Assembly (NCBI GenBank): GCA_002269645.1
Contig: NIVC01004429.1
Span: 1 to 64,000 of the forward strand
DNA length: 64,000 nucleotides
Origin: Macrostomum lignano
Lineage: Eukaryota
Reading direction: 5' to 3'
The notes below the pieces were generated by a model, which searched no databases, was not told the DNA's origin, and saw only the letters and a list, made by a program, of their open reading frames with translations. This document shows positions 12,176-43,130 of this stretch, piece after piece. The translations under genes were made by a program, and so were the position numbers. Each line of letters opens with the position of its first letter. Position 1 is the stretch's first letter.

Positions 12176-12189
12176 GGTTATGGGCCCAG
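12176..12189 (+). promoter_or_regulatory. Primer-binding site, copia-type (internal tRNAi-Met)
   Basis: GGTTATGGGCCCAG directly abuts the 5' LTR, the same PBS as in Drosophila copia. Confidence 0.93.
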
Positions 12190-16223: not shown

Positions 16224-16322
16224 TATAACTGCTAACTCTTTATCTAACTTTGATATTCAAGACACAATATGAACTGTTTGTACCAGTATGCACTAGTTTT
16301 TAAGCTAAACATTAAGTGGGAG

Positions 16323-16579
16323 TGTTAAAGATGCTATAAGTAATCGTTTATCTTAAAATAGTCAACTTTATATTTATAGTAAGTGAATCCAAGTTTTCCT
16401 TCTAGAATTTCTATAACAGACTTCTTAATTATATCTATGGTTTTCGACTCCCTTACCTGTACCACTAAGTTTTGTTTGAGCTACGCCAGTGCTAAATTCC
16501 ATGTTAACCCTTCTTTTGCTATCTTTCTCAAAACTCAATAAACGCCGATTCATTATAATTTAATAAGGCTTTCTTAATA
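16323..16579 (+). repeat. Copia 3' LTR (257 bp)
   Basis: Direct repeat of 11918-12175. Confidence 0.97.
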
Positions 16580-17513
16580 GAAGGTGCACAGGGGAGAAGA
16601 CAGGGAAGGCACAGGGGAGAAGACAAGGAAAGCACAGGAGGGAAGACGGAAAGCACAGAGGAGAAGACAGGGAAGGCACAGGGGAGAAGATAGGGAAAGC
16701 ACAGGGGATATTGAAGACAGGGAAGGCACAGGGGAGAAGACAGGGAAAGCACAGGGGAGATTGAAGACAGGGAAGGCACAGGGGAGAAGACAGGGAAAGC
16801 ACAGGGGATATTGAAGACAGGGAAGGCACAGGGGAGAAGACAGGGAAGGCACAGGGGATATTGAAGACAGGGAAAGCACAGAGGAGAAGAGAGGAAAAGC
16901 ACAAGGGAGAAGACAGGGAAGACACAGGGGAGAAGACAGGGAAAGCACAGGGGAGATTGAAGACAGGGAAGGCACAGAGAAGACAGGGAAGGTGCACAGT
17001 GGAGAAGACAGGAAAGGTACAGGGGAGAAGACAGGGAAGGCACAGGGGAGATTGAAGACAGGGAAGGCACAGGGGAGAAGACAGGGAAAGCACAGGGGAT
17101 ATTGAAGACAGGGAAGGCACAGGGGAGAAGACAGGGAAGGCACAGGGGAGAAGACAGGGGAGAAGACAGGGAAGGCACAGGGGAGATTGAAGACAGGGAA
17201 AGCACAGGGGATATTGAAGACAGGGAAAGCACAGGGGAGATTGAAGACGGAAGGCACAGGGGAGATTGAAGACAGGGAAGGCACAGGGGAGAAGACAGGG
17301 AAAGCACAGGCGAGATTAAAGACAGAAAAAGCACAGGGGCGAAGACAGGGAAAGCACAGGGGAGATTGAAGACAGGGAAGGCACAGGGGAGAAGACAGGG
17401 AAAGCACAGGGGATATTGAAGACAGGGAAGGCACAGGGGAGAAGACAGGGAAAGCACAGGGGAGATTGAAGACAGGGAAGGCACAGGGGAGAAGACAGGG
17501 AAAGCACAGGGAA
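16580..17513. repeat. Purine-rich ~23-bp satellite, right part
   Basis: Same unit as 10691-11917. Confidence 0.97.
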
Positions 17514-18079
17514 GAGACCACGTTTAGTAAATCAGCAAATGAAGCATCGTTAACTACAGCGATTACAATTATACAAAGCACAATGCAAATTAAAGTAAGC
17601 ATGAGTACAAATTTATAGATATATTTATTTAACGCATCGAGTCAGCCTCACAATTGGGTCACTCGGTTTCATTGGCTGCTTCTTTCAAAAAAGCAATGTG
17701 CGATAAAGTTATGACACAATAATGCAATAAGATTACAGTATACAGTATAAAGAGTTGCATTAACAGGCCCTTATGTAAGAAAAGTTAGCTAGCATTAAAT
17801 TTACATAAACAGGCTATTTATTAGTCTAGGAACAAAAATGCTGCACACCTGATGGAATAATATTTTGTTTCAGAAATATAGAAGCTGTCTTATATTATGT
17901 TGGCTTGCCTCATCAAATTTAATTGCTTCCACTTAATTAATATAGCAAACAGCTTAGCTACAGGCAATAAAGCTATCTTATATCGGCTAGAAAAAATTGA
18001 AAAATGCGACGCACAACTTCTTTTGTTTTTTTTCTGCCGGCAATCTAGTTAGAATAAGTCTACTAAAATGAAAATACCA

Positions 18080-18746: not shown

Positions 18747-20381
18747 TCAATTATCCGGCTTCGAAGATTTCATCGAATCCACGTAGCCCCTGGACATTCG
18801 CGCTCGAAACGCTGTGAATGGATCGGCGGCAGCGGAGCCTCCCCGCCGGTCGCCGCCGCCAGTTGCCGAGCCAGTTGACGAACACTCCGCGCCAAGGCCC
18901 AGTCGATCTTCTGAGGACGCCGCCGGCCTGTCGAAAGCGGCGCCGCCTGCTCGTCGGGGCGCGAATCCGCCGCGCGGCCCAACAACCAGAGCGCCGATAG
19001 CGCGCGGCATCCGACTGCTCGACGAAGCCAAAGCCGATGGACGATTGACGCGGCCGGCTGACGTGAACGAAGGCGGACTGGGCGACCGCGAGCCGGCAGC
19101 AGCAACTCCGCCTTCGCCGCCGCCTGCGCCGCCTCGACTATTGGAGGCCGAACGGCTGCGGCTGCGACTAGGGCTTCGGCTTCGGCTTCGGCTGTCGCTG
19201 CGGCTGCGACTCCGGCTGCGGCTTCGACTTCTGCTGCGACTGCGGCTCCGGCTGCGACTCCGGCTGCGGCTTCTGCTGTCCCCGCTGTCACTGTGTATGC
19301 TGCGGGCTCGACGCGACAAGAAGCCGAGAGTGGCGCCGGGGCCGGCCCGGCTAGGCGGACTCGACGGGTTGCCGCCACTGCCGCCTCCGCCGCCGCCGCC
19401 GCTTCCTCCGCCGTTGCCGTCGCCGCGATGCCGCCTTTCTTTGGCTCGCTCCTCTAGCCAGTCGTCGCGCTCAAACACGCGGCCCTCCGCTGTCTCGCCG
19501 TCAGCTTTAGTAGCGGCTAGCAGCGATTTCCTAGCCCGATCCTTGGCCTTGTAGAATTCAAATAAACCGAGCCGCTCCCAGCCTTCGGAGTCTCGCGGAC
19601 TGTCGTGCGACGGCGGCGCCGAATAGGAGTCTAGTGCGGCCCGGATGAACTCGCTGATGGGATGGCGAGCGGGCAGCATGAGCTGGTCGGGATCCAGCTC
19701 TGTATAGGCGGTGGCGTGCAGCGGTATTAGCGGCACCATTAAACTGGCCGGCTGTTGGTAATAAGGCGCCTGAGGCTTCTCCGGCTTGGATATGAGAGCG
19801 GCCGGCGGCGGCAGCAGCGGCTGCGGTGGCGGCGGCGGCTGGCCGGGCGCGAACCCAGGCGGAGGCATGGAGAGGTCCGGCAGAGGCAGCAGGCCGCCGG
19901 GTTTATTTGGACCGAAATTGCTATTGGAAGCTGTTGAATTCAAAGACTGCGTAGCAGTGGAGGAAGATGCGGCGGGCACCGACAAAGGGACAGACGCAGC
20001 GCTCTCGGAGGACCTGGCGGCGGCGGCAGCGGCGGCGGCAGCGGCCTGCCCGATGATCTGCTGCACCCTGGTCCGCTGCTGCTCGATCTGGTCACGCAGA
20101 TGCTTCTCAAACTCCGTGTGCTGTCGTTGCAACTCCTCGCACTTGGCTTGACATTGGATTCGAATCTGGGACGCCTCCTGCGCCAAGTCCGACTCGGCAA
20201 GGCGGTCCTGACGCCACTTGGCGTAGGCGGCCTCGCAGTCGGAAGACAGGGCCTGAGTCACCGCCTCGGGAAAGTAGGCGTTCTGCACCCACAGTGAGCG
20301 AACCTTCTCCAGCTTCTGGGCACGTTCGGGGTCGCTTGCTACTAGCTTGTGCGCCTGGCTGAACATTGGGACTATCACCGC
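18747..20381 (-). CDS. CHERP: CHERP/SCAF6 orthologue, exon 2 (end of CID, Pro-rich region, conserved PPSHDSPRDSEGWE block, RS domain, C-terminus)
   Basis: Acceptor CCACCGCAG| followed by AVIVPM. Contains APYYQQPASLMVPL...YSAPPSHDSPRDSEGWERLGLFEFYKAK, an RS run and DPFTAFRARMSRGY, all matching recalled CHERP blocks. Confidence 0.92.
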   Translation of the reverse strand, partial: AVIVPMFSQAHKLVASDPERAQKLEKVRSLWVQNAYFPEAVTQALSSDCEAAYAKWRQDRLAESDLAQEASQIRIQCQAKCEELQRQHTEFEKHLRDQIEQQRTRVQQIIGQAAAAAAAAAARSSESAASVPLSVPAASSSTATQSLNSTASNSNFGPNKPGGLLPLPDLSMPPPGFAPGQPPPPPQPLLPPPAALISKPEKPQAPYYQQPASLMVPLIPLHATAYTELDPDQLMLPARHPISEFIRAALDSYSAPPSHDSPRDSEGWERLGLFEFYKAKDRARKSLLAATKADGETAEGRVFERDDWLEERAKERRHRGDGNGGGSGGGGGGGSGGNPSSPPSRAGPGATLGFLSRRARSIHSDSGDSRSRSRSRSRSRSRSRSRSRSRSRSRSDSRSRSRSPSRSRSRSASNSRGGAGGGEGGVAAAGSRSPSPPSFTSAGRVNRPSALASSSSRMPRAIGALVVGPRGGFAPRRAGGAAFDRPAASSEDRLGLGAECSSTGSATGGGDRRGGSAAADPFTAFRARMSRGYVDSMKSSKPDN

Positions 20382-21341
20382 CTGCGGTGGGTGATGGGGA
20401 ACGATAGATTTTTAGTTTATTGATTGCATGAGTATTTATTAACATTCATGTCAAATTTTTGGACAATTCACTTTTTTAAAAAACTAGAAATCCGACAGTT
20501 GACGTTTCCAATAACACCGAAAAATTTACGTTCTTAATAACACCGGAATATTTACGTTCTAAATAACACCGGAAATTTTCCATTTTTAATACCGAAATAT
20601 TTACATTCTTTACACCTGAAAATTTGCAGAGGTAACTACACCAAATTTGAAATTTTGTATTCTGAATGACTCAAGAAAATTTAGATTAGCTATAAACCCG
20701 GAAAATTTATATTTCAAACAAACAACTACAGCGTTCACATTTAAAGAATAAATCCGGAAAATTAATGTTACGAATAAAATACGGATCATTGCATAAACCT
20801 TCATATTTTGTAAATCCTGAATCTATTTACCTTTTTAAAGGGCCCTAGGCCTTCTGTATTGTCCTTAACATTCTTCCGTCATTTTATAATTATCTCAAGA
20901 GACCGGAGTCTATTTGAAAATCTGTTAACAAAGGAATGTACAAATAGACAATTCTCGAAACGAAACGGGAATATAAGATGAGGAATATTTGAAGATCTGA
21001 CTAATAGCTTAACAGGATTCCCACTGCCATTGGCCCGTGCTCTTGCCAGTTCTGAATTAAGAAAGAAATAGAGTGCAGCTTTCTTCAAGCGCATTTGTTG
21101 CACACACGGAAATTCTAGACAGAAAGCCTGTGCAGAGTATCGATTTTTTTATTTTAACACCTCAACACAAAAGAAAAATTCAAGACGCTTCGCTTCCTTA
21201 GAGACCAGAGAGGACTGTTGAAGGGCCAAAATTTCTTTGATCTAATTTAATTAGCTCACAATTTTTCCTGATTTATTTCTGCCTTCTGTGTTCTCATTGC
21301 AATTTTTTCTAATTGACGCTACCATCTCTTGTTCAACCTCT

Positions 21342-22490
21342 CAGTCCTTCTGCTGTTCCCCTTCCAGTCTTCTGCTGTTCCCTTCCAGCAGTCTTCTTCT
21401 GCTGTTCCCTTCCAGTCTTCTGCTGTTCCCCTTCCAGTCTTCTGCTGTTCCCCTTCCAGTCTTCTGCTGTTCCCTTCCAGTCTTCTGCTGTTCCCCTTCC
21501 AGTCTTCTGCTGTTCCCCTTCCAGTCTTCTTCTGCTGTTCCCTTCCAGTCTTCTGCTGTTCCCCTTCCAGTCTTCTCTGCTGTTCCCTTCCAGTCTTCTG
21601 CTGTTCCCCTTCCAGTCTTCTGCTGTTCCCTTCCAGTCTTCTGCTGTTCCCTTCCAGCAGTCTTCTTCTGCTGTTCCCCTTCCAGTCTTCTTCTGATGTT
21701 TCCCTTCCAGTCTTCTCTGCTGTTCCCTTCCAGTCTTCTTCTGCTGTTCCCCTTCCAGTCTTCTCTGCTGTTCCCTTCCAGTCTTCTTCTGCTGTTCCCC
21801 TTCCAGTCTTCTTCTGCTGTTCCCCTCCCAGTCTTCTTCTGCTGTTCCCCTTCCAGTCTTCTCTGCTGTTCCCTTCCAGTCTTCTCTGCTGTTCCCTTCC
21901 AGTCTTCTCTGCTGTTCCCCTTCCAGTCTTCTCTGCTGTTCCCCTTCCAGTCTTCTCTGCTGCTCTCCTTCCAGTCTTCTCTGCTGTTCCCCTTCCAGTC
22001 TTCTCTGCTGTTCCCCTTCCAGTCTTCTTCTGCTGTTCCCCTTCCAGTCTTCTCTGCTGTTCCCCTTCCAGTCTTCTCTGCTGTTCCCTTCCAGTCTTCT
22101 CTGCTGTTCCCTTCCAGTCTTCTCTGCTGTTCCCTTCCAGCAGTCTTCTTCTGCTGTTCCCCTTCCAGTCTTCTTCTGATGTTTCCCTTCCAGTCTTCTT
22201 CTGCTGTTCTCCTTCCAGTCTTCTCTGCTGTTCCCTTCCAGTCTTCTCTGCTGTTCCCTTCCAGTCTTCTGCTGTTCCCCTTCCAGTCTTCTGCTGTTCC
22301 CTTCCAGTCTTCTGCTGTTCCCTTACAGCAGTCTTCTTCTGCTGTTCCCCTTCCAGTCTTCTTCTGATGTTTCCCTTCCAGTCTTCTCTGCTGTTCCCTT
22401 CCAGTCTTCTTCTGCTGTTCCCCTTCCAGTCTTCTTCTGATGTTTCCCTTCCAGTCTTCTTCTGCTGTTCTCTTTCCAGTCTTCTGTTGT
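21342..22490. repeat. Pyrimidine-rich ~23-bp minisatellite (CTGCTGTTCCCCTTCCAGTCTT[CT]) in the CHERP intron
   Basis: About 50 variable units; source of ORFs 21288..22531. Confidence 0.96.
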
Positions 22491-23279
22491 TCCGTTTTTC
22501 TATTTATCATTTCACTTTCTTTTTCGAATAATAATTACTATTTCGCACGCAATGTTTTTATCTTGCTGATCATTTTTATGACTTCAGTTAATGCTTTAAA
22601 ATTCCGCCAAAGCAGAGCTTTTAAATAGCAAAAAGCAAATTTAAAAAAAAAGTTATGCGTTGTATTCGTTTCTTCATTCGAAAAGAGAACTGAGAAACCC
22701 TTGCAAAAAATTATGATTGCCCTGTGTCAGCAGAAAATGTAAAGAAGGGAGCAATGAAGCATTAAAAAGTTGTACAACCTTCTTGTGCAGCATTGCTTTT
22801 AGCTTTTTTAAGTCGCACTAGCATGCTAAGGAAATGCCTTTCTTGCCTGTGTTTGTCTCCACTTGTCGCGCAGGAATCACGCAAAATAAATCATGTGAAC
22901 CCCTCTTTTTCACTTCATCTCTTTGCTGTAGCAAGCAGGCTAGAGAAATAAAAGATAAAGAAACACAGTGATCCGATTACTGTTGCGCTAGCATCAGACA
23001 CTGAAATCTATTGACAGGCTTTAGGGAGGCGAGTCATTCTGCCTTCAACACACACGCACAGCTGTTGTTAATCCCCCTACAGTTGTTTGGTTCGGCTCAC
23101 CTCAAGCTTTCGGGCCTCAGTTTGAGCATTCAGCTTCCCTACCTGCATTCAGCCTCCCCATCTGCATTCAGCCTCCCCATCTGCATTCAGCTTCCCCATC
23201 TGCATTTAGCCCCCACTCAATCTTCATTTCTTATTCAATATTCATCTCCCACTCAATCTTTTCAATCAATCCTTGTCAA

Positions 23280-24070
23280 TCATCATCTCTTACTCAATCA
23301 TAATTTTCTACTCAATCATAATTTCCAACTCAATCGTCATCTACTCTATCATCATCTCTTACTCAATCATCATCTCCTACTCAGTCATCATTTCCTACTA
23401 AATCGTCATCTCCTACTCAATCATCATCTCCTACTCAATCATCATCTCCTACTCAATCTTTATCTGCTACTCAATCATCATCTCCTACTCAATCATCATC
23501 TCCTACTCAATCTTTATCTGCTACTCAATCATCATCTCCTACTCAATCTTTATCTGCTACTCAATCATCATCTCCTACTCAATCATCATCTCCTACTCAA
23601 TCATCATCTCCTACTCAATCATCATTTCCTACTTAATCTTTATCTCCTACTCAATCATCATCTACTAAAATTTCATCTCCTACTCAATAATCATCTCATA
23701 CTCAATCATCATCTCATACTCAATTTTCATCTCCTACTCAATAATCATCTCATACTCAATCATCATCTCCTACTCAATCATCATCTCCTACTCAATCATC
23801 ATCTCCTACTGAGTCATATTCTTCTCAATTTTCATCTCCTAATCAGTCATATTCTATTCAATTTTCATCTCCTACTCAAATGACCAACTCCTACTCGATC
23901 ATCAACTCCTACTCGGTCATCTCCTACTTAATTATCAACTCCTACTCAATCTTCATCTCCTATTCAATCATCATCTCCTACTCAATGATCATCTCCTACT
24001 CAATGATCATCTCCTACTCAATTTTCATCTCCTACTCAATCATCAAATCCTACTCAATCATCTCCTACTC
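23280..24070. repeat. 18-bp minisatellite (CATCATCTCCTACTCAAT) in the CHERP intron
   Basis: Tandem units seen directly. Confidence 0.93.
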
Positions 24071-24143
24071 AAGGCACATGAACTGTAACAAACATAACAG
24101 TTATACAAATCATATATACTAAAAATGAAAACACATAACTAAC

Positions 24144-25028
24144 CTGCAAAGCGCCAATCAGAGATTCTGCATTGCGTCGCCTACAATGATGCAACAGATC
24201 ATTAACCAGATAGATCAGATGCAGCCTAGGCGCGAATTCTTGTCCCAAAGCGATTGAACGAGCTAATAGAAAATTAGCAAATACTTCGGTGGCCGCTGAA
24301 TTCTGCGCACGGTCTAGCATCCAATTCTTAGCGGCGCTGATGTTCTCTTTAGTGCAAGCGTCAACTACAGGCTGAACTGCAGCGTCAATCTCTTCTAATG
24401 ACATGCTCATCACGGTGCACAGAGAATGCAATTGTTCCAGTCGGCGACGGTTAATTAACTCGTCAGATTGCTGCTCCTGCGAGGCGATTGCTGCTTCGAA
24501 TTGGGCGGTTAAATTTGTCTCGCTCTGGCTTAGCCTCTGTTCAGCATTTACTAACATCTGTTGCAGAGTCTGCTGCTCAGCCTGAGACTGTTGCTGCAGC
24601 ATAGCAGCCGCAGCGGCCGCCTGTTGCTGCTGCTGTTGAAAAGATGCAATCGGCGGACCGGATGGCGGCAGTGCCGGCGGCGGCAAACTGAATGGCGGCG
24701 GCGGCGGCGGCGGCTGAGTCGTCATCTGCATCGGCATTGACGTCATCGGCGGCTGCTGCGGCGGCTGCTGCAACGGCGGACCGGGCATCAGTGGCCGGAT
24801 TCCCCCACTACTGGCAGTGGACGATGCTGGCGGAGAGAATCTGTGTATGGCGCCTATGGCACCTATGGGCGGCCTGGGCGATTCTAAAATGCTCCCGCCG
24901 CCGCCGCCAGAGGAGTCCCAACGACTGCCACCACCAGAGCTGGACTGAGATCGGCTGCCCCAGCGACTGCCGCTCCCACTACCGCTGCCGCCATTATCCC
25001 ATTGGCTATTTGATCCCCTGGAGTGCAT
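24144..25028 (-). CDS. CHERP: CHERP/SCAF6 orthologue, exon 1 (Gly/Pro/Gln-rich N-terminus and CID domain)
   Basis: Contains QPVVDACTKENISAAKNW...RLHLIYLVNDLLHHC. Donor CAG|GTTAGT at 24143 is phase 0; the intron is 20382-24143 and the joined ORF is 839 aa. Confidence 0.92.
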
Positions 25029-28050: not shown

Positions 28051-28711
28051 ACATTTTAGTCATGTTTTATGCGCATATATTTAGCCTTTAGGCCTACACA
28101 GTGACAGCTTAGGCATAAATTTCAAATTAAGCATTTGATTACAAAATGACATTAAATCCCATATCAATCCCATATCAAAAGCCCATATGTATGAATTCAG
28201 TTTATGTGCGCTGGTCACTGCAGTTTCAAAGAAAAGTAAACTAAAAAGATTTGATTGATAAAACAAAACATTTTTAGTTAAGAAAAGCCCATATTTTTGT
28301 ATTAAAGTTTAACAGTATTTTTGCAAAATAAAAATTTTCATTTTTGACTTGCGATACTTATGTAAATTAAATTAAGTGAAAAGAAGAAGTAAGTTCCGAT
28401 AAATTGCCACGCCGGGGTGGTTGATTTTCAGCCTTTTAATTTATTGAGTTTCTTTCAAAAGCGTGGGTAGACTCTGCTAAATTTAGGAAAATAAATGAGC
28501 TAAATATTTTCGAAGTAACTCATTCTTTCGATAACTCATTCTTCGCTTTAATTAAATTTTGATCGAAGTACCCGCAGTACATGTTATGTGTCTGGATGCA
28601 CCGTCGTGTTGACTCTGCACCTTACATGGTACTTTAATAGCCGCGGAAAAGCACATGGGATTAGATCAACCGATTAAGCTTTCTTTGCTAGAGAGGAAGC
28701 GAAAATGTTAA

Positions 28712-30429
28712 AGGGGATGTCAACTTAAGCACCAGAATGGAGCCCGAAGTTCAGCTCCGGACCAAACCGACTGCAATCGATAACTTGTCGGCCCAGACGA
28801 CTAGAATCGCCGAGACATCCCATCCGGCTCCCTTCCTTGGGGTCCCAGGGGATAAAGGGGATAAAATGGGGATCTCATGTCAACTTAAGGCTCTGGAATG
28901 GAGCCCGAAGTTCAGCTCCGGCCCAAACCGACTGCAATCGATAACTTGTCGGCCCAGACGACTAGAATCGCCGAGACATCCCATCCGGCTCCCTTCCTTG
29001 GGGTCCCAGGGGATAAAGGGGATAAAATGGGGATCTCATGTCAACTTAAGGCTCTGGAATGGAGCCCGAAGTTCAGCTCCGGACCAAACCGACTGCAATC
29101 GATAACTTGTCGGCCCAGACGACTAGAATCGCCGAGACATCCCATCCGGCTCCCTTCCTTGGGGTCCCAGGGGATAAAGGGGATAAAATGGGGATCTCAT
29201 GTCAACTTAAGGCTCTGGAATGGAGCCCGAAGTTCAGCTCCGGCCCAAACCGACTGCAATCGATAACTTGTCGGCCCAGACGACTAGAATCGCCGAGACA
29301 TCCCATCCGGCTCCCTTCCTTGGGGTCCCAGGGGATAAAGGGGATAAAATGGGGATCTCATGTCAACTTAAGGCTCTGGAATGGAGCCCGAAGTTCAGCT
29401 CCGGACCAAACCGACTGCAATCGATAACTTGTCGGCCCAGACGACTAGAATCGCCGAGACATCCCATCCGGCTCCCTTCCTTGGGGTCCCAGGGGATAAA
29501 GGGGATAAAATGGGGATCTCATGTCAACTTAAGGCTCTGGAATGGAGCCCGAAGTTCAGCTCCGGACCAAACCGACTGAAATCGATAACTTGTCGGCCCA
29601 GACGACTAGAATCGCCGAGACATCCCATCCGGCTCCCTTCCTTGGGGTCCCAGGGATAAAGGGGATAAAATGGGGATCTCATGTCAACTTAAGGCTCTGG
29701 AATGGAGCCCGAAGTTCAGCTCCGGACCAAACCGACTGCAATCGATAACTTGTCGGCCCAGACGACTAGAATCGCAGAGACATCCCATCCGGCTCCCTTC
29801 CTTGGGGTCCCAGGGGATAAAGGGGATAAAATGGGGATCTCATGTCAACTTAAGGCTCTGGAATGGAGCCCGAAGTTCAGCTCCGGCCCAAACCGACTGC
29901 AATCGATAACTTGTCGGCCCAGACGACTAGAATCGCCGAGACATCCCATCCGGCTCCCTTCCTTGGGGTCCCAGGGGATAAAGGGGATAAAATGGGGATC
30001 TCATGTCAACTTAAGGCTCTGGAATGGAGCCCGAAGTTCAGCTCCGGACCAAACCGACTGCAATCGATAACTTGTCGGCCCAGACGACTAGAATCGCCGA
30101 GACATCCCATCCGGCTCCCTTCCTTGGGGTCCCAGGGGATAAAGGGGATAAAATGGGGATCTCATGTCAACTTAAGGCTCTGGAATGGAGCCCGAAGTTC
30201 AGCTCCGGACCAAACCGACTGCAATCGATAACTTGTCGGCCCAGACGACTAGAATCGCCGAGACATCCCATCCGGCTCCCATCCTTGGGGTCCCAGGGGA
30301 TAAAGGGGATAAAATGGGGATCTCATGTCAACTTAAGGCTCTGGAATGGAGCCCGAAGTTCAGCTCCGGACCAAACCGACTGAAATCGATAACTTGTCGG
30401 CCCAGACGACTAGAATCACCGAGACATCC
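28712..30429 (+). repeat. Left arm: about 10.7 tandem copies of a 161-bp unit
   Basis: Unit ATGs at 28737, 28898, 29059, 29220, 29381, 29542, 29702, 29863, 30024, 30185 and 30346; one unit is 160 bp. Confidence 0.98.
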
Positions 30430-31432
30430 GCTGTGCCACTATGTTCCGCTATGTGCTACTTTGCTGCCATTAAGCAGGACAAATGTGTTAACGAGAGGCA
30501 CAAACCGTATCAGTGGCTGCCGTCAGCCGGCTTCAGTGAGCCCAGCCGATTAGACGTTGTTATCGAGCCTCGATGGCAAAGTACAACCGGGCGCATCCAG
30601 GTTTTGAATCATTTAAACAGCTCCACCGTCATGGACAGGGCTATCGTTGTTCGAATTCGGTCAGAATTTCATGCGCCGAGTGCCAACGAACTGAACGAAA
30701 TTGAGCAGCTGCACTTCAACTGTGATCTGAAGCGTGCCCCCCTGCTAACACAAGGGCATGGATTGCCGTCAACCCGCTGGATCCAAAAGCTCGGGGTTCC
30801 CCCGAATTCACACAGTGAATTTGTCAGAGGTTTCGGTGGATCCGTATCAACTAAATCAAGCCGATTATTACATTCAAAACATTCGTGTCAAGGAGGTTCT
30901 CGATAGCTACGAAGGTGACTCCTGGAGAGACTTTGAGTTACACATCCAAGCCGCCGGGAGTGTTGGAAGTTTCGGCAAGCGACGCCGCTAGAAAACTGGA
31001 GCAACCGATTCGGTCGGTGGCATCCGTCTTGATTTTTCTTGATTTGATTTTGTCGTTTTCTCGCGCCATAATTCAAAATCCTACCGCGTGATTCTTAGAG
31101 TGTGTGACAGCAGCGGACAATCGCTTTGGTTTTAGAGATCCAGGATTGCAACTTCTTCCTGGCTTCTACTCGTCAGCAAAAGCAGGAAGTAGGACTGCAG
31201 GCTGCGATTGTCATGTACGAGCGTAATGGCAGTGCTCAAACTCCTGGGCTGCTACGCTTACCACCAAGATACATATGTAGCTATCGAAGGTCTGGTGCCG
31301 GCCTTCGCTTTGTTGATTTCGCTCTTCCACGCAGCCTTGTTGCCAGACTTTATGCTAGAGAAAACGCATTACCACAGCAGCGAAAGCCTACTGAGCAACA
31401 GTTTAGGGGCCAGCGAGAGGAGTTTCAGTCAG
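30430..31432 (+). pseudogene. Fragment of a divergent DDE_Tnp_4-like transposase with a SWIM-like C-terminus; several frameshifts and a stop
   Basis: SRLDVVIEPRWQSTTGRIQ (30544-30600), FPRI...PYQLNQADYYIQ (30797-30877), GFYSSAKAGSRTAGCDCHV (31161-31217) and SVMAVLKLLGCY appear in the order expected from recalled invertebrate DDE_Tnp_4+SWIM transposases (SRLVTxxRWVVESxNGRIK, GxYQLKQAxSY, GWYCxCKxGARTVGCCAHVASV). Confidence 0.6.
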
Positions 31433-33494
31433 CCCAAGGAAGGGAGCCGGATGGGATGTCTCTGCGATTCTAGTCGTCTGGGCCGACAAGTTATCGATTG
31501 CAGTCGGTTTGGTCCGGAGCTGAACTTCGGGCTCCATTCCAGAGCCTTAAGTTGACATGAGATCCCCATTTTATCCCCTTTATCCCCTGGGACCCCAAGG
31601 AAGGGAGCCGGATGGGATGTCTCGGCGATTCTAGTCGTCTGGGCCGACAAGTTATCGATTTCAGTCGGTTTGGTCCGGAGCTGAACTTCGGGCTCCATTC
31701 CAGAGCCTTAAGTTGACATGAGATCCCCATTTTATCCCCTTTATCCCCTGGGACCCCAAGGAAGGGAGCCGGATGGGATGTCTCGGCGATTCTAGTCGTC
31801 TGGGCCGACAAGTTATCGATTGCAGTCGGTTTGGTCCGGAGCTGAACTTCGGGCTCCATTCCAGAGCCTTAAGTTGACATGAGATCCCCATTTTATCCCC
31901 TTTATCCCCTGGGACCCCAAGGAAGGGAGCCGGATGGGATGTCTCGGCGATTCTAGTCGTCTGGGCCGACAAGTTATCGATTGCAGTCGGTTTGGGCCGG
32001 AGCTGAACTTCGGGCTCCATTCCAGAGCCTTAAGTTGACATGAGATCCCCATTTTATCCCCTTTATCCCCTGGGACCCCAAGGAAGGGAGCCGGATGGGA
32101 TGTCTCGGCGATTCTAGTCGTCTGGGCCGACAAGTTATCGATTGCAGTCGGTTTGGTCCGGAGCTGAACTTCGGGCTCCATTCCAGAGCCTTAAGTTGAC
32201 ATGAGATCCCCATTTTATCCCCTTTATCCCCTGGGACCCCAAGGAAGGGAGCCGGATGGGATGTCTCGGCGATTCTAGTCGTCTGGGCCGACAAGTTATC
32301 GATTGCAGTCGGTTTGGGCCGGAGCTGAACTTCGGGCTCCATTCCAGAGCCTTAAGTTGACATGAGATCCCCATTTTATCCCCTTTATCCCCTGGGACCC
32401 CAAGGAAGGGAGCCGGATGGGATGTCTCGGCGATTCTAGTCGTCTGGGCCGACAAGTTATCGATTGCAGTCGGTTTGGTCCGGAGCTGAACTTCGGGCTC
32501 CATTCCAGAGCATTAAGTTGACATGAGATCCCCATTTTATCCCCTTTATCCCCTGGGACCCCAAGGAAGGGAGCCGGATGGGATGTCTCGGTGATTCTAG
32601 TCGTCTGGGCCGACAAGTTATCGATTGCAGTCGGTTTGGGCCGGAGCTGAACTTCGGGCTCCATTCCAGAGCCTTAAGTTGACATGAGATCCCCATTTTA
32701 TCCCCTTTATCCCCTGGGACCCCAAGGAAGGGAGCCGGATGGGATGTCTCGGCGATTCTAGTCGTCTGGGCCGACAAGTTATCGATTGCAGTCGGTTTGG
32801 GCCGGAGCTGAACTTCGGGCTCCATTCCAGAGCCTTAAGTTGACATGAGATCCCCATTTTATCCCCTTTATCCCCTGGGACCCCAAGGAAGGGAGCCGGA
32901 TGGGATGTCTCGGCGATTCTAGTCGTCTGGGCCGACAAGTTATCGATTGCAGTCGGTTTGGGCCGGAGCTGAACTTCGGGCTCCATTCCAGAGCCTTAAG
33001 TTGACATGAGATCCCCATTTTATCCCCTTTATCCCCTGGGACCCCAAGGAAGGGAGCCGGATGGGATGTCTCGGCGATTCTAGTCGTCTGGGCCGACAAG
33101 TTATCGATTGCAGTCGGTTTGGTCCGGAGCTGAACTTCGGGCTCCATTCCAGAGCCTTAAGTTGACATGAGATCCCCATTTTATCCCCTTTATCCCCTGG
33201 GACCCCAAGGAAGGGAGCCGGATGGGATGTCTCGGCGATTCTAGTCGTCTGGGCCGACAAGTTATCGATTGCAGTCGGTTTGGGCCGGAGCTGAACTTCG
33301 GGCTCCATTCCAGAGCCTTAAGTTGACATGAGATCCCCATTTTATCCCCTTTATCCCCTGGGACCCCAAGGAAGGGAGCCGGATGGGATGTCTCGGCGAT
33401 TCTAGTCGTCTGGGCCGACAAGTTATCGATTGCAGTCGGTTTGGTCCGGAGCTGAACTTCGGGCTCCATTCTGGTGCTTAAGTTGACATCCCCT
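31433..33494 (-). repeat. Right arm: about 12.8 tandem copies of the same 161-bp unit, inverted
   Basis: Unit ATGs on the minus strand at 33469, 33308 and every 161 bp down to 31537. Confidence 0.98.
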
Positions 33495-34673
33495 TTGTCA
33501 TGAAACATTTTGTCATATGTAATTGTTGTTCACATTGTTTTTTATTTTATATAAGATCAAAAGTTGTAAATACTCACAAGTGGCATTAGCTTTAGAATTA
33601 TTGATTTAGAAAACTGCGGCATTTGTAGGTAAAGTCTTAATAAAGTCCTAAAGTCCTAGTTTGAATTTTGCTTCCGCAAGCATCTTTAACTGCATTCTAT
33701 ATTTAGACGTAATCAGACGTTGATCGTGGGTTGAATTTTAATATTCCATGAACCTGCAGCACGTTCTTCTCAATGTACGCCCTCGCTGCATTGTGTGATC
33801 GCACTTACAATGATTTAGGTAACCCTTACATCTAAATGTAGTCTCGACGACAGAATTCAACCTCTGTCAATGCATCCATGTATATAGAGTAAGCAATCGC
33901 CTTGGAAGCGATGACGCTGAGTGCACAAGCCAGAAAAGCGTAGTATATAGTGTATTTTTATACACATCTATATTTTTTTCTAATTTTTAGCGACCCAAAC
34001 CGGAAAATGTGCCAGACTCTAGAACTTTGCCTCCTATAACAGCTATAGCTTAGGCATGACTTCGTGCGGTCAATGTGAGCACTGTATGCGGTGCATTTAC
34101 ACTGAGCAAATATACGACTCCCCAATTGCTGAACTATGATAGCGGAGCAGTTGCCAATAATCCTGCCTGCATGGAGATTCGAGAGTTCAAGGCATGGAGA
34201 TGTCCCCTGCCTACCTAACTACCTCACTATCCTGATTGCCTGTCGAGAAGAGAACGTAGGTTCACCTTTTTTTAGCTGAGCTGCCTGGTGTGTGTGCACT
34301 CTTGTCCAAGCTGTCAAGTTTGCTATCAAGCCATGCAGCCTGACAAGTTAGCAGACATGCGAATATAAGTTTATAATATATTGAATAGTATTGCACGTGT
34401 AGCAGTGGGCTTAAACACGAGAAATTTACCTTGGATTAAAACTTAAGCTATGGTATGCCTTTCTGAGGGAGCAACGTAGATAGCTAGCTAGATAGATAGC
34501 CACGTACAGGTAAATCTAACAAATCCATGTTAAATACGTTTGTAGACAGGAGCCTTGGAGACAAGTATTGAAATAATGAAAGATGACTGACAACCGATAA
34601 ATTAAAAATATCCATATGCTAACATATTAATATCAAGGATGCTAATATAAACCTACATATGTATACACAGGTC

Positions 34674-35134: not shown

Positions 35135-37179
35135 CGCTGTTGTATTTTGTTGTTGTTGTTGTCGTTGTGTGCCTGCTCAGGGGAGTGGGCGAAATGGGCT
35201 GTCAATGCCTCTCGACGGCTGTGTGACGCTGTCGCACGCCGCTAAACATTCTACTGAAGGACTGTGGCAACAGAACGAGGGCACGATTGAATTGGCTTAG
35301 CTTAGAATGTTTCTAAGACTCGGAATTTGACAAATATCTTTCAATGGCCGAGACAGGTCCTCTAAAGACAGCCTCTCGCTAGGGGTTGGCTCAAAAAAAA
35401 ACGAAGAAAAGTCAAAGAGACTGAATAGTCTGACATCTGCGGTCTTCGTTCTATCCTTTCAAGTTTTTTTACTCAAAGTCGAAGAGGAAGAGAGAAAAAG
35501 AAGGGGCAGGAGAGCGTTCAGGGTCAGTCCGAGGTTCGGTCGGATAAAACACTCCTCGCCCAGGTGGCATCATATAGCTAGAGTAAAATTGGAGCACCTA
35601 TCGTGACCGTGTGTAGAGCTGAGACAGAAAGTTGAGACCCCGGGCGCGCGGCTACTCAGATATTCGCTACTCAGATCTATAACAGTCTCCGCTCGATCCC
35701 AGCCGCCTTTGAGCACAGGGGAGAAACGAGAATTAAGGAAAAGGGAGAAGGGAGGGAGGGAGAGAGAGTTGCAGTGCGGGCTGCTTCATGCGGATCGAGG
35801 CCGGCAGATCACGCAACTGAGAGCGATCTGAGAGAAAAGCGGCTAAAAAGAAAGGATTGAAATTGGAGCCATTTACCCCTATAGCGACCACCGCCTCCGC
35901 CCTAGCAACCTTCTCTTCCCTTTTCTTCTTCTGCCTGAGGAGTCTTTGGCAATCCGAAGACAGACGGCAGGAAGACTCGGTAGCAAAAGACGCCATAAAA
36001 GACGAAGATTCCCTCACAGCGTGGATAGGCCTGTATGGCCTCTAAAATTTAACTACCAAGTAAAACAAAAGGAAAGGGAAGGAATATTTCCTCCTCATAG
36101 CTACTACATCCATAAATGCAGGCACTCTAGGCTACCTTTTCAATTGGTATTAATTCTAAGAATTGTTCCCCTAAGCAGACGGCATCCCCTCCCCCAGTTC
36201 CCTGACCGATCCCTACAGCGAAGCGGGTGAGCAGATAATTCTCCCTTCTCCTCTCCCCTCCGTTGACCTATGCAAAAAAACGGTATTGAATCCCAGAGAG
36301 CCAATTTCTGGCCGCGCGGACGCTTTAAGTCCCCCCAGGAGGCTTTCCAGACCTTTTTTAGAGTCTGTCTGAAATCGAAGCGCTGGCTCTGGTCCTCATC
36401 AGAGTGGGCATGAGCGCGGGGCAGGGGGGAGCGATATAATGCGCCTGAAATCCGATTTCGATCCTTTGCATTTTTGCCGACTCAATCGAGCCAAGCTCTG
36501 TGCTCTTCTCTGCTCTGACTGTCTAGCATTTTTTATCTCATTCTCGGGTCATTTTATTCCCGGGTCCTGCGCAAAAAACGGGCATTCAACATTTATGCTG
36601 TTTGGAAGACGGCAACAAAATGAAATTATCTGATAGCCATGGGGCAACGCGTCAAGCAAATGCAGAATTAAATATTGTTGAGCACAATACGGCACTAATG
36701 ATGGTAGGAGAGATGGCCGGCTTCTCCTAAATGCAATATTGATTGACGGAACAAAATCACAGGGCACGCAGGGCCTGTTAAATTTGCAATTTCTCTTACC
36801 TTTGGGAATTCAATGCCTTGCCCAAACTTATAAAATTTTTGTCTATCTAGAAAAAAATAGAAGAAACCTTGGGCTAAAGACTCAAGCCTAGTATCGCGTT
36901 CCAAGGCGGATTCTGTCGCCTTAAAAGGCTTGCATTGACTTAAGCAAAGCTTTTAATTAAACCTAAGTATTTCCTCCGGCTGGTTCTGCGCCATCCCATC
37001 AGTGGAAGTCGTAGTTTATGATGCCTTGCAGTCTCATATTTGATTATAATGATCTCTTTCAATGCGAGATCCGCAGTCTCAGAAAGCTTTACAATACATA
37101 AAATATATAGATACAGACCTTGCATGCAGAACTATAATCCTCTCTCAGTCTTCTCTCTTCTCTCAGCTTCGGTCCCTTT

Positions 37180-37986
37180 CCCCGTCACACCTGGAGCTTG
37201 TCTCCTTCTCCACCGTCACACCCGGAGCTTGTCTCCTTCTCCACCGTCACACCCGGAGCTTGTCTCCTTCTCCACCGTCACACCCGGAGCTTGTCTCCTT
37301 CTCCACCGTCACACCCGGAGCTTGTCTCCTCTCCACCGTCACACCCGGAGCTTGTCTCCTTCTCCACCGTCACACCCGGAGCTTGTCTCCTCCACCGTCA
37401 CACTCGGAGCTCGTCTCCTTCTCCACCGTCACACCCGGAGCTTGTCTCCTCCACCGTCACACTCGGAGCTCGTCTCCTTTTCCACCGTCACACCCGGAGC
37501 TTGTCTCCTCCACCGTCACACTCGGAGCTCGTCTCCTTCTCCACCGTCACACCGGAGCTTGTCTCCCTTTATACCTGTCACACCTGGAGCTTGTCTACCT
37601 CTCTACCTGTCACACCTGGAGCTTGTCTCCCTCTATACCTGTCACACCTGGATCTTGTCTCCCTCTCCCCATCACACCTGGAGCTTGTCTTTTCTCTCCG
37701 TCACACCTGGAGCTTGTCTTTTTCTCTCCGTCACACCTGGAGCTTGTCTTCTTCTCTCCGTTACACCTGGAGCTTGCCTTCTTCTCTCCGTCACACCTGG
37801 AGCTTTCCTTCTTCTCTCCGTCACACCTGGAGCTTGTCTTTTCTCTCCGTTACACCTGGAGCTTGTCTTTTTCTCTCCGTCACACCTGGAGCTTGTCTTC
37901 TTCTCTCCGTTACACCTGGAGCTTGCCTTCTTCTCTCCGTCACACCTGGAGCTTTCCTTCTTCTCTCCGTCACACCTGGAGCTTGT
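37180..37986. repeat. ~31-bp minisatellite (CACACCTGGAGCTTGTCTCCTTCTCCACCGT)
   Basis: Tandem units; source of ORFs 37040..38259. Confidence 0.96.
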
Positions 37987-38959
37987 CCCTTTCTGCCCAA
38001 GTTCAGCAAAGAGGTTATTTTAAAATTGTTTTTTTATCAGTCTGAAAAAAATATTTTATGCTTAGATTCGTTTACAACGCTTGATTTGCTTACGGGTGTT
38101 AAAAATACATTGGAAAATAAAATTTTTGACCGTTGCAGCGAGCGGAGATACCTGCGTATTTATAAAACCAGATATTTACCAACTTTACCCACTGCCTCTT
38201 CCCGCTTCGATCTTTCACTGGACCTCGAGTTCATTTTATGCCGGAGTTTTACTGCTTAGGAAACGCTAAAAAACAGTTACAAATGAAACAAACAAACAAG
38301 AAACTGCTTTAGTTGTTCATCTTATACAGAACACTTTCACAGAATAATTCATCCCGTTTAACAACAGTCAAAGGGTTTCCAACTTTATTAAAATTAACAC
38401 TGAAACACGAGAAAGAAGAAATAGATGATTTAAACTAAACTTTCTGATTTTAATTTTGAGATACGTTGACTCTTTGTGCCAGATAAAAAGCATATACTGG
38501 TACAATGCAAAATAGACAGAGATTAGTAAGCAAAAGATTAGGTTCCTGTCTGATAACAAGTCCAAGAAGCTTATACGAACCAAATATTTAGTGTTCATCA
38601 ACAAAAATAAACAGAATTTCGCTTGCATGTTTTTATAAATGATGTATTCTACTATTACAAGATTAATTCAGAAAAAAATTATATTGACGTTGGTTGGATT
38701 GTCTGTTCACGGACTATTGTTCGCACTTCAAGGACGCTGCACGTTGAAATTGTACAAATTTCACTTGATGGGCCGAATTTTTCTCAAAAAATTATTTTAC
38801 CGAGATAGGAAGTTGACATTAGTATAAAAGACTGTCAATCCGCAAAAAAGGTGAAGACATATTCCCTGAATTTTAATTCAGGGCTTTACCATAGACAAAC
38901 TCGGAGGGAAAAAGGGAGGAAATAGATACGGTTGAAATTTTTTACCTTGCCTGCCTCAC

Positions 38960-42061: not shown

Positions 42062-43130
42062 CTGCTCTGGGTGATTCTGTCTGATAATTGAGTGATTCTG
42101 CCTGATAACTGAGTGATTCTGCCTGATAACTGAGTGATTCTGCCTGATAACTGAGTGATTCTGCCTGATAACTGAGTGATTCTGCCTGATAACTGAGTGA
42201 TTCTGCCTGATAACTGAGTCATTCTGCCTGATAACTGAGTGATTCTGCCTGATAACTGAGTGATTCTGACTGATAACTGAGTGATTCTGCCTGATAACTG
42301 AGTGATTCTGTCTGATAACTGAGTGATTCTGCCTGATAACTGAGTGATTCTGCCTGATAACTGAGTGATTCTGCCTGATAACTGAGTGATTCTGCCTGAT
42401 AACTGAGTGATTCTGCCTGATAACTGAGTGATTCTGCCTGATAACTGAGTCATTCTGCCTAATAACTGAGTGATTCTGCCTGATAACTGAGTGATTCTGC
42501 CTGATAACTGAGTGATTCTGCCTGATAACTGAGTGATTCTACCTGATTACTGACTCAGTCTACCTGGTTACTGACTGATTACTGACTCAGTCTACCTGAT
42601 TACTGACTCAATCTACCTGGTTACTGACTGATTACTGACTCAGTCTACCTGATTACTGACTCAATCTACCTGATTACTGACTCAGTCTACCTGGTTACTG
42701 ACTGATTACTGACTCAGTCTACCTGATTACTGACTCAATATACCTGATTACTGACTCAGTCTACCTGGTTACTGACTGATTACTGACTCAGTCTACCTGG
42801 TTACTGACTGATTACTGACTCAGTCTACCTGATTACTGACTCAATCTACCTGATTATCGACTCAGTCTACCTGGTTACTGACTCAGTCTACCTGGTTACT
42901 GACTGATTACTGACTCAGTCTACCTGATTAGGGACTCAGTCTACCTGATTACTGACTCAGTCTACCTGATTAGGGACTCAGTCTACCTGATTACTGACTC
43001 AGTCTACCTGATTACTGACTCAGTCTACCTGATTAGGGACTTAGTCTACCTGGTTACTGACTCAGTCTACCTGATTAGGGACTCAGTCTACCTGGTTACT
43101 GACCGATTACTGACTCAGTCTACCTGATTA
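42062..43130. repeat. 21-bp minisatellite in two adjacent variant blocks
   Basis: CTGATAACTGAGTGATTCTGC up to about 42540, then CTGATTACTGACTCAGTCTAC. Confidence 0.97.

What the first reader, a model, noticed from the sequence alone, without database searches (positions are those of the whole stretch)
28712..33494. Foldback-like DNA transposon whose inverted arms are 161-bp satellite arrays
Seen: a 1.7-kb array (+) and a 2.1-kb array (-) of the same 161-bp unit face each other around a 1-kb unique core, and only the outermost units carry the distinct terminal sequence AGGGGATGTCAACTTAAGCACCAGAATGG. Known: Drosophila FB, Galileo and Tetris have repeat-built TIRs, and Tetris seeded satellite DNA. 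Inference: a possibly undescribed family that transports a nucleosome-length satellite, can fold into a kilobase hairpin or give dsRNA, and has a transposase relic of a different type from those elements. This is the best candidate for a novel system in the window.
Basis: partly seen in the sequence, partly recalled or inferred. Interest (0 to 1): 0.85.

Follow-up and report, generated by a model that had tools for sequence, protein, structure and literature searches.

The report
Flatworm foldback transposon with satellite arms
This is a real 4.8-kb defective cut-and-paste transposon in the flatworm Macrostomum lignano whose two inverted ends have each grown into an array of 161-bp repeats; its transposase remnant places it in the PIF/Harbinger-Spy superfamily, where such repeat-built arms had not been described, so it is a new variant of a known phenomenon, not a new kind of system.

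Summary
Two inverted arrays of one 161-bp unit (10.7 and 12.8 copies, units about 99.4% identical) flank a 1,003-bp core, and only the two outermost units carry the variant end GGGGATGTCAACTTAAGCACCAG. The window is contig NIVC01004429.1 of Macrostomum lignano (Mlig_3_7). The core is not anonymous. It holds the frameshifted C-terminal ~200 residues, plus 3' region, of a transposase found intact elsewhere (P0010, 560 aa). That protein family has a C2H2 finger, an HTH_Tnp_4 domain (above Pfam cutoff in a second homolog), a weak DDE_Tnp_4 match and a D..D..R(3)E motif, so it is PIF/Harbinger-ISL2EU-Spy (PHIS) type. The P0010 element starts with nearly the same 20 bp. All three ends seen abut AAA. 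The window copy lies in AAA|TTT with no target-site duplication, which is the Spy signature. The other Spy criteria (DDE spacing, GGANNNNG end) are not met. Two M. lignano gene models from other loci share the same arm/core junctions. Best reading: a non-autonomous, trans-mobilised PHIS (Spy-like) element with foldback-type arms, structurally convergent with FB, Galileo and Tetris. Genome-wide copy number, satellite status, mobility and hairpin or dsRNA formation remain untested.

The parts
28710..28712 (.). AAA: left half of the presumed AAA|TTT target (or outermost 3 nt of the TIR)
   Evidence: Similarity between the window's left end, its right end (reverse complement) and the L004 end stops immediately outside AAA in all three.
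28713..28741 (+). Left terminal sequence GGGGATGTCAACTTAAGCACCAGAATGGA (presumed transposase recognition and cleavage end)
   Evidence: Present only in the outermost units. It is 91% identical over 23 nt to the end of the transposase-bearing element L004.
28713..30429 (+). Left arm: 10.7 tandem 161-bp units, the innermost truncated at about unit position 104-108
   Evidence: TRF; units in register.
30430..31432 (+). Core: the 3' third of the parent transposon, left after an internal deletion
   Evidence: Collinear with L004 at 2019-2096, 2544-2623 and 2745-2795 (76-82% DNA identity). No Pfam hit on its own.
30433..31032 (+). Transposase relic: frameshifted equivalent of P0010 residues ~360-560 (CATMFRYV..FAAIKQDK..NERHKPYQW..LSLFEFGQNF..VSVDPYQL..CWKFRQ..LEN). 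The catalytic E region is damaged; HTH and both catalytic D residues are absent.
   Evidence: phmmer hits P0001, P0002, P0005 and P0010; tblastn across three frames; alignments.
31166..31368 (+). Conserved segment downstream of the transposase stop (YSSAKAGSRTAGCDCHV.., RFVD..LPR.L); possible second exon or ORF of the parent element, frameshifted here
   Evidence: tblastx against L004 2746-2931, 17/19 residues identical in the best patch; no Pfam family.
31433..33493 (-). Right arm: 12.8 tandem 161-bp units in inverted orientation, the innermost truncated at about unit position 125-130
   Evidence: TRF; inverted repeats; units in register.
33465..33493 (-). Right terminal sequence, the exact reverse complement of the left one
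33494..33496 (.). TTT: right half of the presumed AAA|TTT target
   Evidence: The reconstructed empty site is ...AAAATGTTAAA|TTTGTCATGAAACATTTT... No perfect direct repeat of 3 bp or more at any of 8 boundary offsets.

Best explanation

Shown:
- Its core is the frameshifted C-terminal third, plus 3' region, of the family's transposase gene.
- Its ends carry the family's conserved ~20-bp terminus.
- Each end is the first unit of an array of 161-bp repeats.
- Every internal unit contains a copy of the terminus interrupted by 5 nt and changed in the next 7 nt.

Inferred:
- It cannot move by itself. It is mobilised in trans by a family transposase that binds the HTH/zinc-finger recognition sequence at the two outermost units and cuts there.
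- It integrates Spy-fashion between AAA and TTT without duplicating the target.
- The arms arose by tandem duplication of the terminal ~161 bp. They expand and contract by unequal exchange or slippage and are kept alike by exchange between arms (shared outer order T,C,.,C and shared variant pair 58A-95A).
- The terminal units keep the ancestral ...CCAG end sequence because only copies with intact ends transpose.
- Internal units may act as extra transposase-binding sites, as reported for Galileo.
- The near-perfect 1.7-2.1-kb inverted arms make the element foldback-prone and recombinogenic.
For: Structure.

Transposase relic. Exhaustive phmmer with the core ORF finds P0010 (560 aa), P0005, and the M. 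lignano models P0001 and P0002. tblastn maps P0010 residues ~360-560 onto 30433-30996 in three frames.

Transposase type. P0010 has a C2H2 finger, HTH_Tnp_4 (E=2e-4) and DDE_Tnp_4 (E=0.011 whole protein; 0.0015 for the isolated core), with D197, D291 and R368(3)E372. The second homolog's N-terminal ORF hits HTH_Tnp_4 at 33.5 bits, above the 27-bit cutoff. The R(3)E signature is the one given for all PHIS/IS5 transposases in PMC4122938.

Shared terminus. L004 reads cgcttAAA|GAGGATGTCAACTTAGGCCAG; the window reads tgttAAA|GGGGATGTCAACTTAAGCACCAG at both ends.

Target. AAA...TTT flanks with no TSD match the Spy definition and none of the other five PHIS target types.

Other copies. P0001 and P0002 span the identical left junction, and P0001 also spans the right junction. 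Their other parts have no match in this 64-kb window, so they come from other loci.

Precedent. Foldback arms have evolved independently in the Mutator and P superfamilies.
Against: - Only one copy could be inspected at DNA level in M. lignano. No empty site, insertion polymorphism or intact autonomous copy in this species was seen.
- AAA could be the outermost part of the TIR and not host DNA: AAAGGGGAT also recurs inside every unit.
- DDE_Tnp_4 is below Pfam's cutoff.
- P0010's D(93)D(80)E spacing lies outside the D(79-80)D(44-62)E given for Spy. It has a zinc finger, which most Spy transposases lack. The end is GGGGATGT / GAGGATGT, not GGANNNNG.
- The M. lignano assembly is highly redundant (180-312 Mb duplicated), so extra copies could be segmental duplicates.
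- Copy numbers within arrays may be mis-assembled.
- The structure prediction of P0010 failed (pLDDT 30.7).
Confidence: 0.75

Rival explanations
1. It is a PIF/Harbinger-proper (TWA-duplicating) or other TSD-making PHIS element. Its duplication is missing because the copy is a recombinant between two insertions (as with Galileo at inversion breakpoints) or because the duplication has decayed.
For: Two of the three ends read TAA immediately before AG[A/G]GGATG. Foldback-type elements are known to recombine ectopically. DDE spacing and the zinc finger do not fit Spy.
Against: The right flank reads TTG where TAA or TTA is expected, which needs two substitutions in an element whose arms are 98-99% identical. 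AAA is present at 3 of 3 ends. None of the TWA, AT, ANT, CWG or TNA signatures fits at any offset.
Confidence: 0.12
2. It is not a single mobile unit. It is a local rearrangement: an inverted duplication of a satellite array around a dead transposon fragment, or two truncated elements lying head to head, now immobile.
For: The arms differ in length and in the phase of their inner ends (unit position ~104-108 versus ~125-130) and in variant order. No second full copy was inspected at DNA level.
Against: Both outer ends are identical, precise, and homologous to the end of a transposase-bearing element. The order 5' end, C-terminal transposase, 3' region, 3' end is collinear with L004. The same two arm/core junctions recur in gene models from other loci.
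Confidence: 0.07
3. It is an assembly fold-back artefact of the PacBio/Canu assembly.
For: Long-read assemblies can create palindromes from unrecognised SMRTbell adapters. The genome is hard to assemble. Reads could not be checked here.
Against: The palindrome is not perfect. It has a 1-kb asymmetric core with real homology to a transposase, unequal unit numbers and different variant orders. It lies mid-contig at 28.7-33.5 kb of 79 kb. Gene models from the other assembly (ML2) also read unit, core, inverted unit, although ML2 shares the same PacBio reads.
Confidence: 0.03
4. It is a transposon-derived hairpin locus that the host now uses, for example as a source of hairpin RNA, siRNA or piRNA against the family; its mobility is irrelevant.
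For: The arms are 1.7-2.1 kb and nearly perfectly complementary, so a read-through transcript would form long dsRNA. This is compatible with the main explanation and does not replace it.
Against: There is no expression or small-RNA evidence. The single unit has no special fold (z = -0.81). No Rfam family was found.
Confidence: 0.03

Closest known systems
Spy transposons (PHIS superfamily; Han et al. 2014, PMC4122938; cgSpy, PMC11304231)
   Same: Cut-and-paste element bounded by host-like AAA...TTT with no target-site duplication. TIR starts with G. Single transposase of more than 500 aa with an N-terminal HTH and an IS5/Harbinger-like D..D..R(3)E core. Spy TIR length is highly variable (9-1,474 bp).
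   Different: Spy long TIRs are stated to lack subrepeat structure, whereas here the arms are pure 161-bp arrays. D(93)D(80)E spacing instead of D(79-80)D(44-62)E. A C2H2 finger is present. The end is GGGGATGT, not GGANNNNG. Flatworms are not among the reported Spy hosts. Clade membership was not tested.
PIF/Harbinger and ISL2EU (other PHIS groups; PMC4482050)
   Same: HTH_Tnp_4 + DDE_Tnp_4-type transposase; AT-rich target; TIRs starting with GG.
   Different: No TWA (Harbinger) or AT (ISL2EU) duplication. No THAP domain. No Myb/SANT or YqaJ second ORF was detected in the 3-kb L004 contig, which is truncated at its 3' end.
Galileo (Drosophila, P superfamily)
   Same: Foldback-like: long TIRs built of internal tandem repeats, many non-autonomous copies, and repeats that carry extra transposase-binding sites. 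This is the best functional analogy for the internal units.
   Different: Galileo has a P-type THAP transposase (its TSD, 7 bp from my own knowledge, was not checked here). This element has a PHIS-type relic and no TSD.
Tetris and FB (Drosophila foldback elements, Mutator-related; PMC4079207)
   Same: Arms of tandem repeats (Tetris ~220 bp; FB subrepeats per my own knowledge). The repeat is derived from part of the terminal sequence. Arrays can expand into satellite DNA. Copies lack a transposase.
   Different: Tetris has an 866-bp non-repetitive flanking domain outside the repeats and 8-10-bp TSDs. Here the array starts at the very terminus, there is no TSD, and a recognisable transposase remnant of another superfamily is retained.
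Tandem-repeat-bearing MITEs (Xstir and miDNA4 in Xenopus, bivalve MITEs; reviewed in PMC12628747)
   Same: Non-autonomous DNA transposons that carry and disperse satellite-like monomers.
   Different: In those elements the repeats lie between short TIRs in one orientation. Here the repeats are the TIRs, in inverted orientation.

Membership tests
Foldback-type elements (structural class: FB, Galileo, Tetris) | Very long TIRs made of tandem subrepeats that make up most of the element | tested here: met
   Arms of 1,717 and 2,061 bp out of 4,781 bp (79%), 161-bp units, 98-99% complementary.
Foldback-type elements (structural class: FB, Galileo, Tetris) | Middle domain with little or no coding capacity (non-autonomous copies) | tested here: met
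   The 1,003-bp core holds only a frameshifted C-terminal transposase remnant.
FB / Tetris (Mutator-related foldback elements) | 8-10-bp target-site duplication | tested here: not met
   No direct repeat of 3 bp or more at any of 8 boundary offsets. Tetris TSDs are given in PMC4079207.
Galileo (P superfamily) | P-type transposase with THAP domain | tested here: not met
   The relic's full-length relative has C2H2 + HTH_Tnp_4 + DDE_Tnp_4-like domains and no THAP or P-element domains.
PHIS superfamily (PIF/Harbinger-ISL2EU-Spy) | N-terminal HTH of the DDE_Tnp_4-associated type | tested here: met
   HTH_Tnp_4 at 33.5 bits (cutoff 27) in L005 ORF1, and 21.3 bits at the homologous position in P0010.
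PHIS superfamily (PIF/Harbinger-ISL2EU-Spy) | DDE catalytic core alignable to the IS5/Harbinger type, with conserved D...D...P...R(3)E | tested here: inconclusive
   DDE_Tnp_4 E=0.0015-0.011, below cutoff. D197, D291, P348, R368(3)E372 are present. AF2 model unusable. No reference sequences were available for a tree.
Spy group | Element bounded by host 5'-AAA and TTT-3' with no TSD | tested here: met
   Window: ttAAA|GGGG...CCCC|TTTgt. L004 left end: ttAAA|GAGG. Joint chance about 3e-5 if the boundaries are independent of the motif. No TSD.
Spy group | Uninterrupted AAATTT at the empty (paralogous or orthologous) site, proving that AAA/TTT are host bases | not testable with these tools
   No eukaryotic genome search was available. 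Flanks are unique in the window. AAAGGGGAT also occurs inside each unit, so AAA might belong to the element.
Spy group | Single ORF transposase with D(79-80)D(44-62)E spacing | tested here: not met
   P0010 is D(93)D(80)E (criterion).
Spy group | Terminal 5'-GGANNNNG-3' motif | tested here: not met
   The ends are GGGGATGT (window) and GAGGATGT (L004). Only the leading G/GG agrees.
Spy group | Transposase falls in the Spy clade in a DDE-domain phylogeny | not testable with these tools
   No Spy, ISL2EU or Harbinger reference sequences could be obtained.
PIF/Harbinger proper | 3-bp TWA target-site duplication | tested here: not met
   With the element taken as AGGGG...CCCCT, the flanks are TAA and TTG.
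ISL2EU | AT duplication in an A|AT|T target, and a THAP-bearing transposase | tested here: not met
   No AT flanks. P0010 has a C2H2 finger, not THAP.
Satellite DNA | The same monomer in long arrays at many loci, independent of the element | not testable with these tools
   23.5 monomers here, all inside the element. None elsewhere in the window. One other M. lignano locus shows at least 1.6 tandem units (P0002). No hits in metagenome, prokaryote or viral collections.

The most novel reading that the evidence does not exclude
This is the first Spy-like (TSD-less, AAA|TTT-inserting) transposon lineage reported from Platyhelminthes. It has a divergent transposase (C2H2 finger, D93D80E spacing), and its ends have expanded into homogeneous 161-bp arrays. 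That would give a concrete mechanism for the unexplained TIR expansion and contraction noted in Spy, extend the foldback architecture to a third DNA-transposon superfamily (after Mutator and P), and mark a likely seed of a 161-bp satellite in M. lignano. The near-identity of units and arms suggests recent activity, so an intact partner transposase may exist and could serve as a native, footprint-free vector in this transgenic model.
Probability: 0.3. Interest if true: 0.6.

Novelty: new variant of a known kind. Interest (0 to 1): 0.45.

Why it matters
It extends foldback-type, satellite-building arms to the PHIS (PIF/Harbinger-Spy) superfamily, after Mutator and P. That supports the view that this architecture is a recurrent outcome of TIR elongation plus loss of the transposase. 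Unlike Tetris, this element keeps a readable transposase remnant and a related full-length gene, so its parent lineage can be identified. If the AAA|TTT, TSD-less insertion is confirmed, Spy-like elements reach flatworms, and an endogenous scarless transposon becomes a candidate tool for M. lignano, where transgenesis matters. Such elements may also contribute to the unusually high tandem-repeat load and the assembly difficulty of this genome, and long inverted arms are potential hotspots for rearrangement.

Tried and rejected
- Direct Pfam scan of all core reading frames and of the unit ORF: nothing (one search failed on stop codons).
- Word-indexed homolog searches: the unit ORF gave none; the globin gave none at 1e-10, a threshold I set too strictly; the CID-gene exon was swamped by low-complexity words.
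- Exact-protein look-ups of the globin, copia pol, unit ORF, P0001 and P0002: not on record.
- Unit motif scans of metagenome, prokaryote and viral collections: zero hits.
A longer pattern would have been better.
- Transposase-based scans of viral and prokaryotic contigs: no relatives.
- Idea that the whole 161-bp unit is recognisable in L004's single-copy end: rejected, since the alignment beyond 35 nt is no better than shuffles.
- Candidate TSDs: GAAA (4 bp, at offset 8, seen by eye and outside the offsets scanned) and TGTTA/TGTCA (4 of 5). Both are within chance given the many offset and length combinations examined.
- Intrinsic structure of the unit: none (z = -0.81). Rfam: none.
- AlphaFold2 of P0010 with a 2-sequence alignment: pLDDT 30.7, so no fold search was done.
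- PDB and NCBIfam searches: only the zinc finger.
- Spy paper supplements: no transposase sequences held, so no phylogeny.


Full report
**Observation.** Tandem Repeats Finder reports a 161-bp array at 28717-30429 (10.7 copies, 98% matches). The same unit appears in reverse complement at 31433-33489 (12.8 copies). The arms pair as inverted repeats of up to 971 nt at 98% complementarity, reaching from 28705 to 33501. Units printed in register show that unit 1 of each arm begins AGGGGATGTCAACTTAAGCACCAGAATGG. All 22 internal units instead have GGGGA-TCTCA-TGTCAACTTAAG-GCTCTGG. So each unit contains a copy of the terminus interrupted by 5 nt and altered in the following 7 nt. The exact terminal 17-mer occurs only twice in the window even with three mismatches allowed (0.12 expected by chance). 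The core is 1,003 bp (30430-31432). No other copy of unit, terminus or core exists in the 64 kb.

**Fine structure of the arms.** Units differ by about 1 nt in 161, equally within the left arm (1.04), within the right arm (1.09) and between arms (1.03).
- From the outside, both arms start with the order [terminal unit, 45C, consensus, 45C]. This is a 322-bp higher-order pattern.
- Both contain the adjacent variant pair [58A, 95A]. These are units 6-7 on the left and the two innermost units on the right.
- The arms stop at different phases of the unit: about position 104-108 on the left and 125-130 on the right.
- Each unit ends with three GGGGAT motifs, at positions 137, 146 and 157 in the register starting at 28873.
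- A single unit has no unusual fold (z = -0.81).

The arrays are therefore young or actively homogenised, share a common origin, and have since changed in unit number independently.

**Source.** Exact-protein look-ups of two neighbouring ORFs place the window at positions 1-64000 of contig NIVC01004429.1 (78,989 bp) of assembly GCA_002269645.1. NIVC00000000 is the Mlig_3_7 assembly of the flatworm Macrostomum lignano. It is a Canu assembly of about 130x PacBio data polished with Illumina reads. In this genome 15% is simple or tandem repeats, and 180-312 Mb of the assembly is duplicated (PMC5730564). That explains the very high minisatellite density of the window.

**What the core is.** Pfam sees nothing in any frame of the core. 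An exhaustive phmmer search with the longest core ORF (30421-30903) returned four meaningful relatives:
- P0001, UniProt A0A1I8IYQ6, from M. lignano.
- P0005, from a Logan contig of run SRR31252247 (locus L005).
- P0010, a 560-aa ORF on a 3,023-bp JGI metagenome contig (locus L004).

P0010 has an N-terminal C2H2 finger, HTH_Tnp_4 (E=2e-4) and DDE_Tnp_4 (E=0.011 whole protein; 0.0015 for the isolated catalytic region). It carries the motifs GDHTY (D197), FDRGY (D291) and RFAVE (R368-x3-E372). The N-terminal ORF of the independent homolog L005 hits HTH_Tnp_4 at 33.5 bits, above Pfam's 27-bit cutoff. R(3)E and the D...D...P...R(3)E pattern are the signature given for IS5, PIF/Harbinger, ISL2EU and Spy transposases (PMC4122938).

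tblastn maps P0010 residues ~360-560 onto 30433-30996 across three reading frames. DNA homology to L004 continues past the stop codon: L004 2544-2623 matches window 30961-31039, and L004 2745-2795 matches window 31166-31216. That downstream region includes a strongly conserved peptide, YSS[S/A]KAGSRTAGCDCHV, which has no Pfam family.

The core is therefore the 3' third of a transposase-bearing parent element. The HTH, both catalytic aspartates and the 5' region are deleted, and the glutamate region is damaged.

**Ends and target.** L004's element begins cgcttAAA|GAGGATGTCAACTTAGGCCAG (position ~101). The window's two ends read tgttAAA|GGGGATGTCAACTTAAGCACCAG and tgacAAA|GGGGATGTCAACTTAAGCACCAG. 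The proteins are only ~40% identical in the shared region, yet the terminal ~20 bp are 91% identical. That fits a conserved transposase recognition and cleavage site. The terminal unit shares ...CCAG with L004 whereas internal units have ...CTCTGG, so the outermost unit keeps the ancestral end. Similarity stops exactly outside AAA at all three ends.

The window copy sits as AAA|element|TTT. No direct repeat of 3 bp or more is present at any of eight boundary offsets. From local trinucleotide frequencies the joint chance of AAA, TTT, AAA is about 3e-5, provided the motif is not part of the element. Insertion between AAA and TTT without a duplication defines Spy transposons (PMC4122938), and this behaviour was confirmed experimentally for cgSpy (PMC11304231). 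The signatures of the other PHIS groups do not fit: TWA, A|AT|T, ANT, CWG and C|TNA|G.

Two caveats apply. As in the original Spy study, AAA/TTT can only be assigned to the host with an empty site, which I could not obtain. AAAGGGGAT also recurs inside every unit.

**Other copies.** P0001 and P0002 read through the identical left arm/core junction (...IAETS|AVPLCSAMC..., which in the other frame is ...RHP|LCHYVPLCA...). P0001 also reads through the right junction (...SFSQPKEGSRMGCLGDSSRLGRQ). P0002 contains 86 residues (1.6 units) of unit translation. The remaining parts of both models have no match in this window and differ from each other. The same deletion derivative therefore exists at two or more other loci. 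This favours amplification of the non-autonomous element. Because the assembly is redundant, segmental duplication is not excluded.

**Mechanism proposed.** The shown and inferred steps are separated in the Best explanation section. In short, this is a trans-mobilised, internally deleted PHIS (Spy-like) element. Its terminal ~161 bp were tandemly duplicated. The arrays then expanded by unequal exchange or slippage and were kept alike by exchange between arms. Selection for transposition preserved the true ends on the outermost units. By analogy with Galileo, whose TIR repeats carry extra transposase-binding sites (cited in PMC4079207), the internal units may add binding sites. The long, nearly perfect inverted arms make hairpin or cruciform formation and ectopic recombination physically plausible, but nothing here tests that.

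**Rivals.**
- A TSD-making Harbinger-type element that lost its duplication by recombination or decay (0.12).
- A local, immobile rearrangement (0.07).
- An assembly fold-back artefact (0.03). This is argued against by the asymmetric homologous core, unequal arms, mid-contig position, and the same unit, core, inverted-unit order in gene models from the other assembly, though that assembly shares the same reads.
- A host-used hairpin-RNA locus (0.03), which is compatible with the main reading.

**Comparison with known systems.** The architecture is that of foldback-type elements (FB, Tetris, Galileo), but membership in those families fails on TSD and transposase type. Superfamily membership in PHIS is supported: HTH_Tnp_4 is met, and the DDE motif is present though below the Pfam cutoff. 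Within PHIS only the Spy target signature fits, but three other Spy criteria are not met or are unclear: DDE spacing, the GGANNNNG end, and absence of a zinc finger. The clade could not be tested. I therefore call it 'Spy-like', not a Spy.

The Spy paper states that long Spy TIRs show no subrepeat structure. A 2025 review of transposon-derived satellites mentions no Harbinger, PIF or Spy case. Flatworms are not among the reported Spy hosts. No paper on this element or satellite in Macrostomum was found.

**Verdict.** It is a new variant of a known kind and of moderate interest (0.45). It would be more interesting if TSD-less insertion, recent activity and satellite seeding are confirmed by the genome-wide analyses listed under next steps.

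Noticed in passing
window 10690-17515: A young copia-type LTR retrotransposon lies inside a 23/50-bp minisatellite (GCACAGGGGAGAAGACAGGGAAG) that continues on both sides (10690-11917 and 16586-17515). Its LTRs are 11917-12176 and 16322-16580 (~260 bp, 98-100% identical), with a gag ORF at 12258-13502 and a pol ORF at 13527-16223 carrying RVT_2 and rve domains.
   Followed up: partly
L004 2746-2931; window 31166-31368: A conserved peptide lies downstream of the transposase stop codon (YSS[S/A]KAGSRTAGCDCHV, then RFVD..LPR.L). The L004 frame stays open to the contig end. There is no Pfam family. It may be a second exon or ORF of this transposon family.
   Followed up: partly
window 28702-28709 and 33504-33511: The flanks of the element form an 8-bp inverted repeat (AAAATGTT / AACATTTT) around the reconstructed AAATTT site. 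This may be chance or a palindromic target preference.
   Followed up: no
window, whole: Minisatellite density is extreme: 94 TRF rows, with many 12-50-bp units in kilobase arrays (for example 4943-5726, 8745-9475, 21347-22485, 37175-37987, 42067-43130, 62416-63698). This is consistent with the 15% tandem-repeat content reported for M. lignano.
   Followed up: no
window 6358-7077 (+): A 239-aa globin ORF (Pfam Globin, E=1e-13) has an N-terminal MGC extension, a possible acylation site. It had no homolog at E<=1e-10 in the word-indexed protein search.
   Followed up: partly
window 18747-25028 (-): A split gene encodes a CID domain (exon 24069-25028) and DUF7819 plus a long SR/RS-rich tail (exon 18747-20378). 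It looks like a CTD-interacting, SR-related factor. The element lies about 3.7 kb from its 5' end.
   Followed up: no
window 56654-56975: A second, unrelated tandem repeat has an 80/161-bp period (4 x 80 bp). The match to the 161-bp length is coincidental.
   Followed up: no
L005 442-1116: The transposase homolog from run SRR31252247 is split over three frames and reads GTHTY where P0010 has the catalytic GDHTY, so that copy is decayed. It is closer to the M. lignano relic (~70% DNA identity) than P0010 is, which suggests it comes from a related host.
   Followed up: partly
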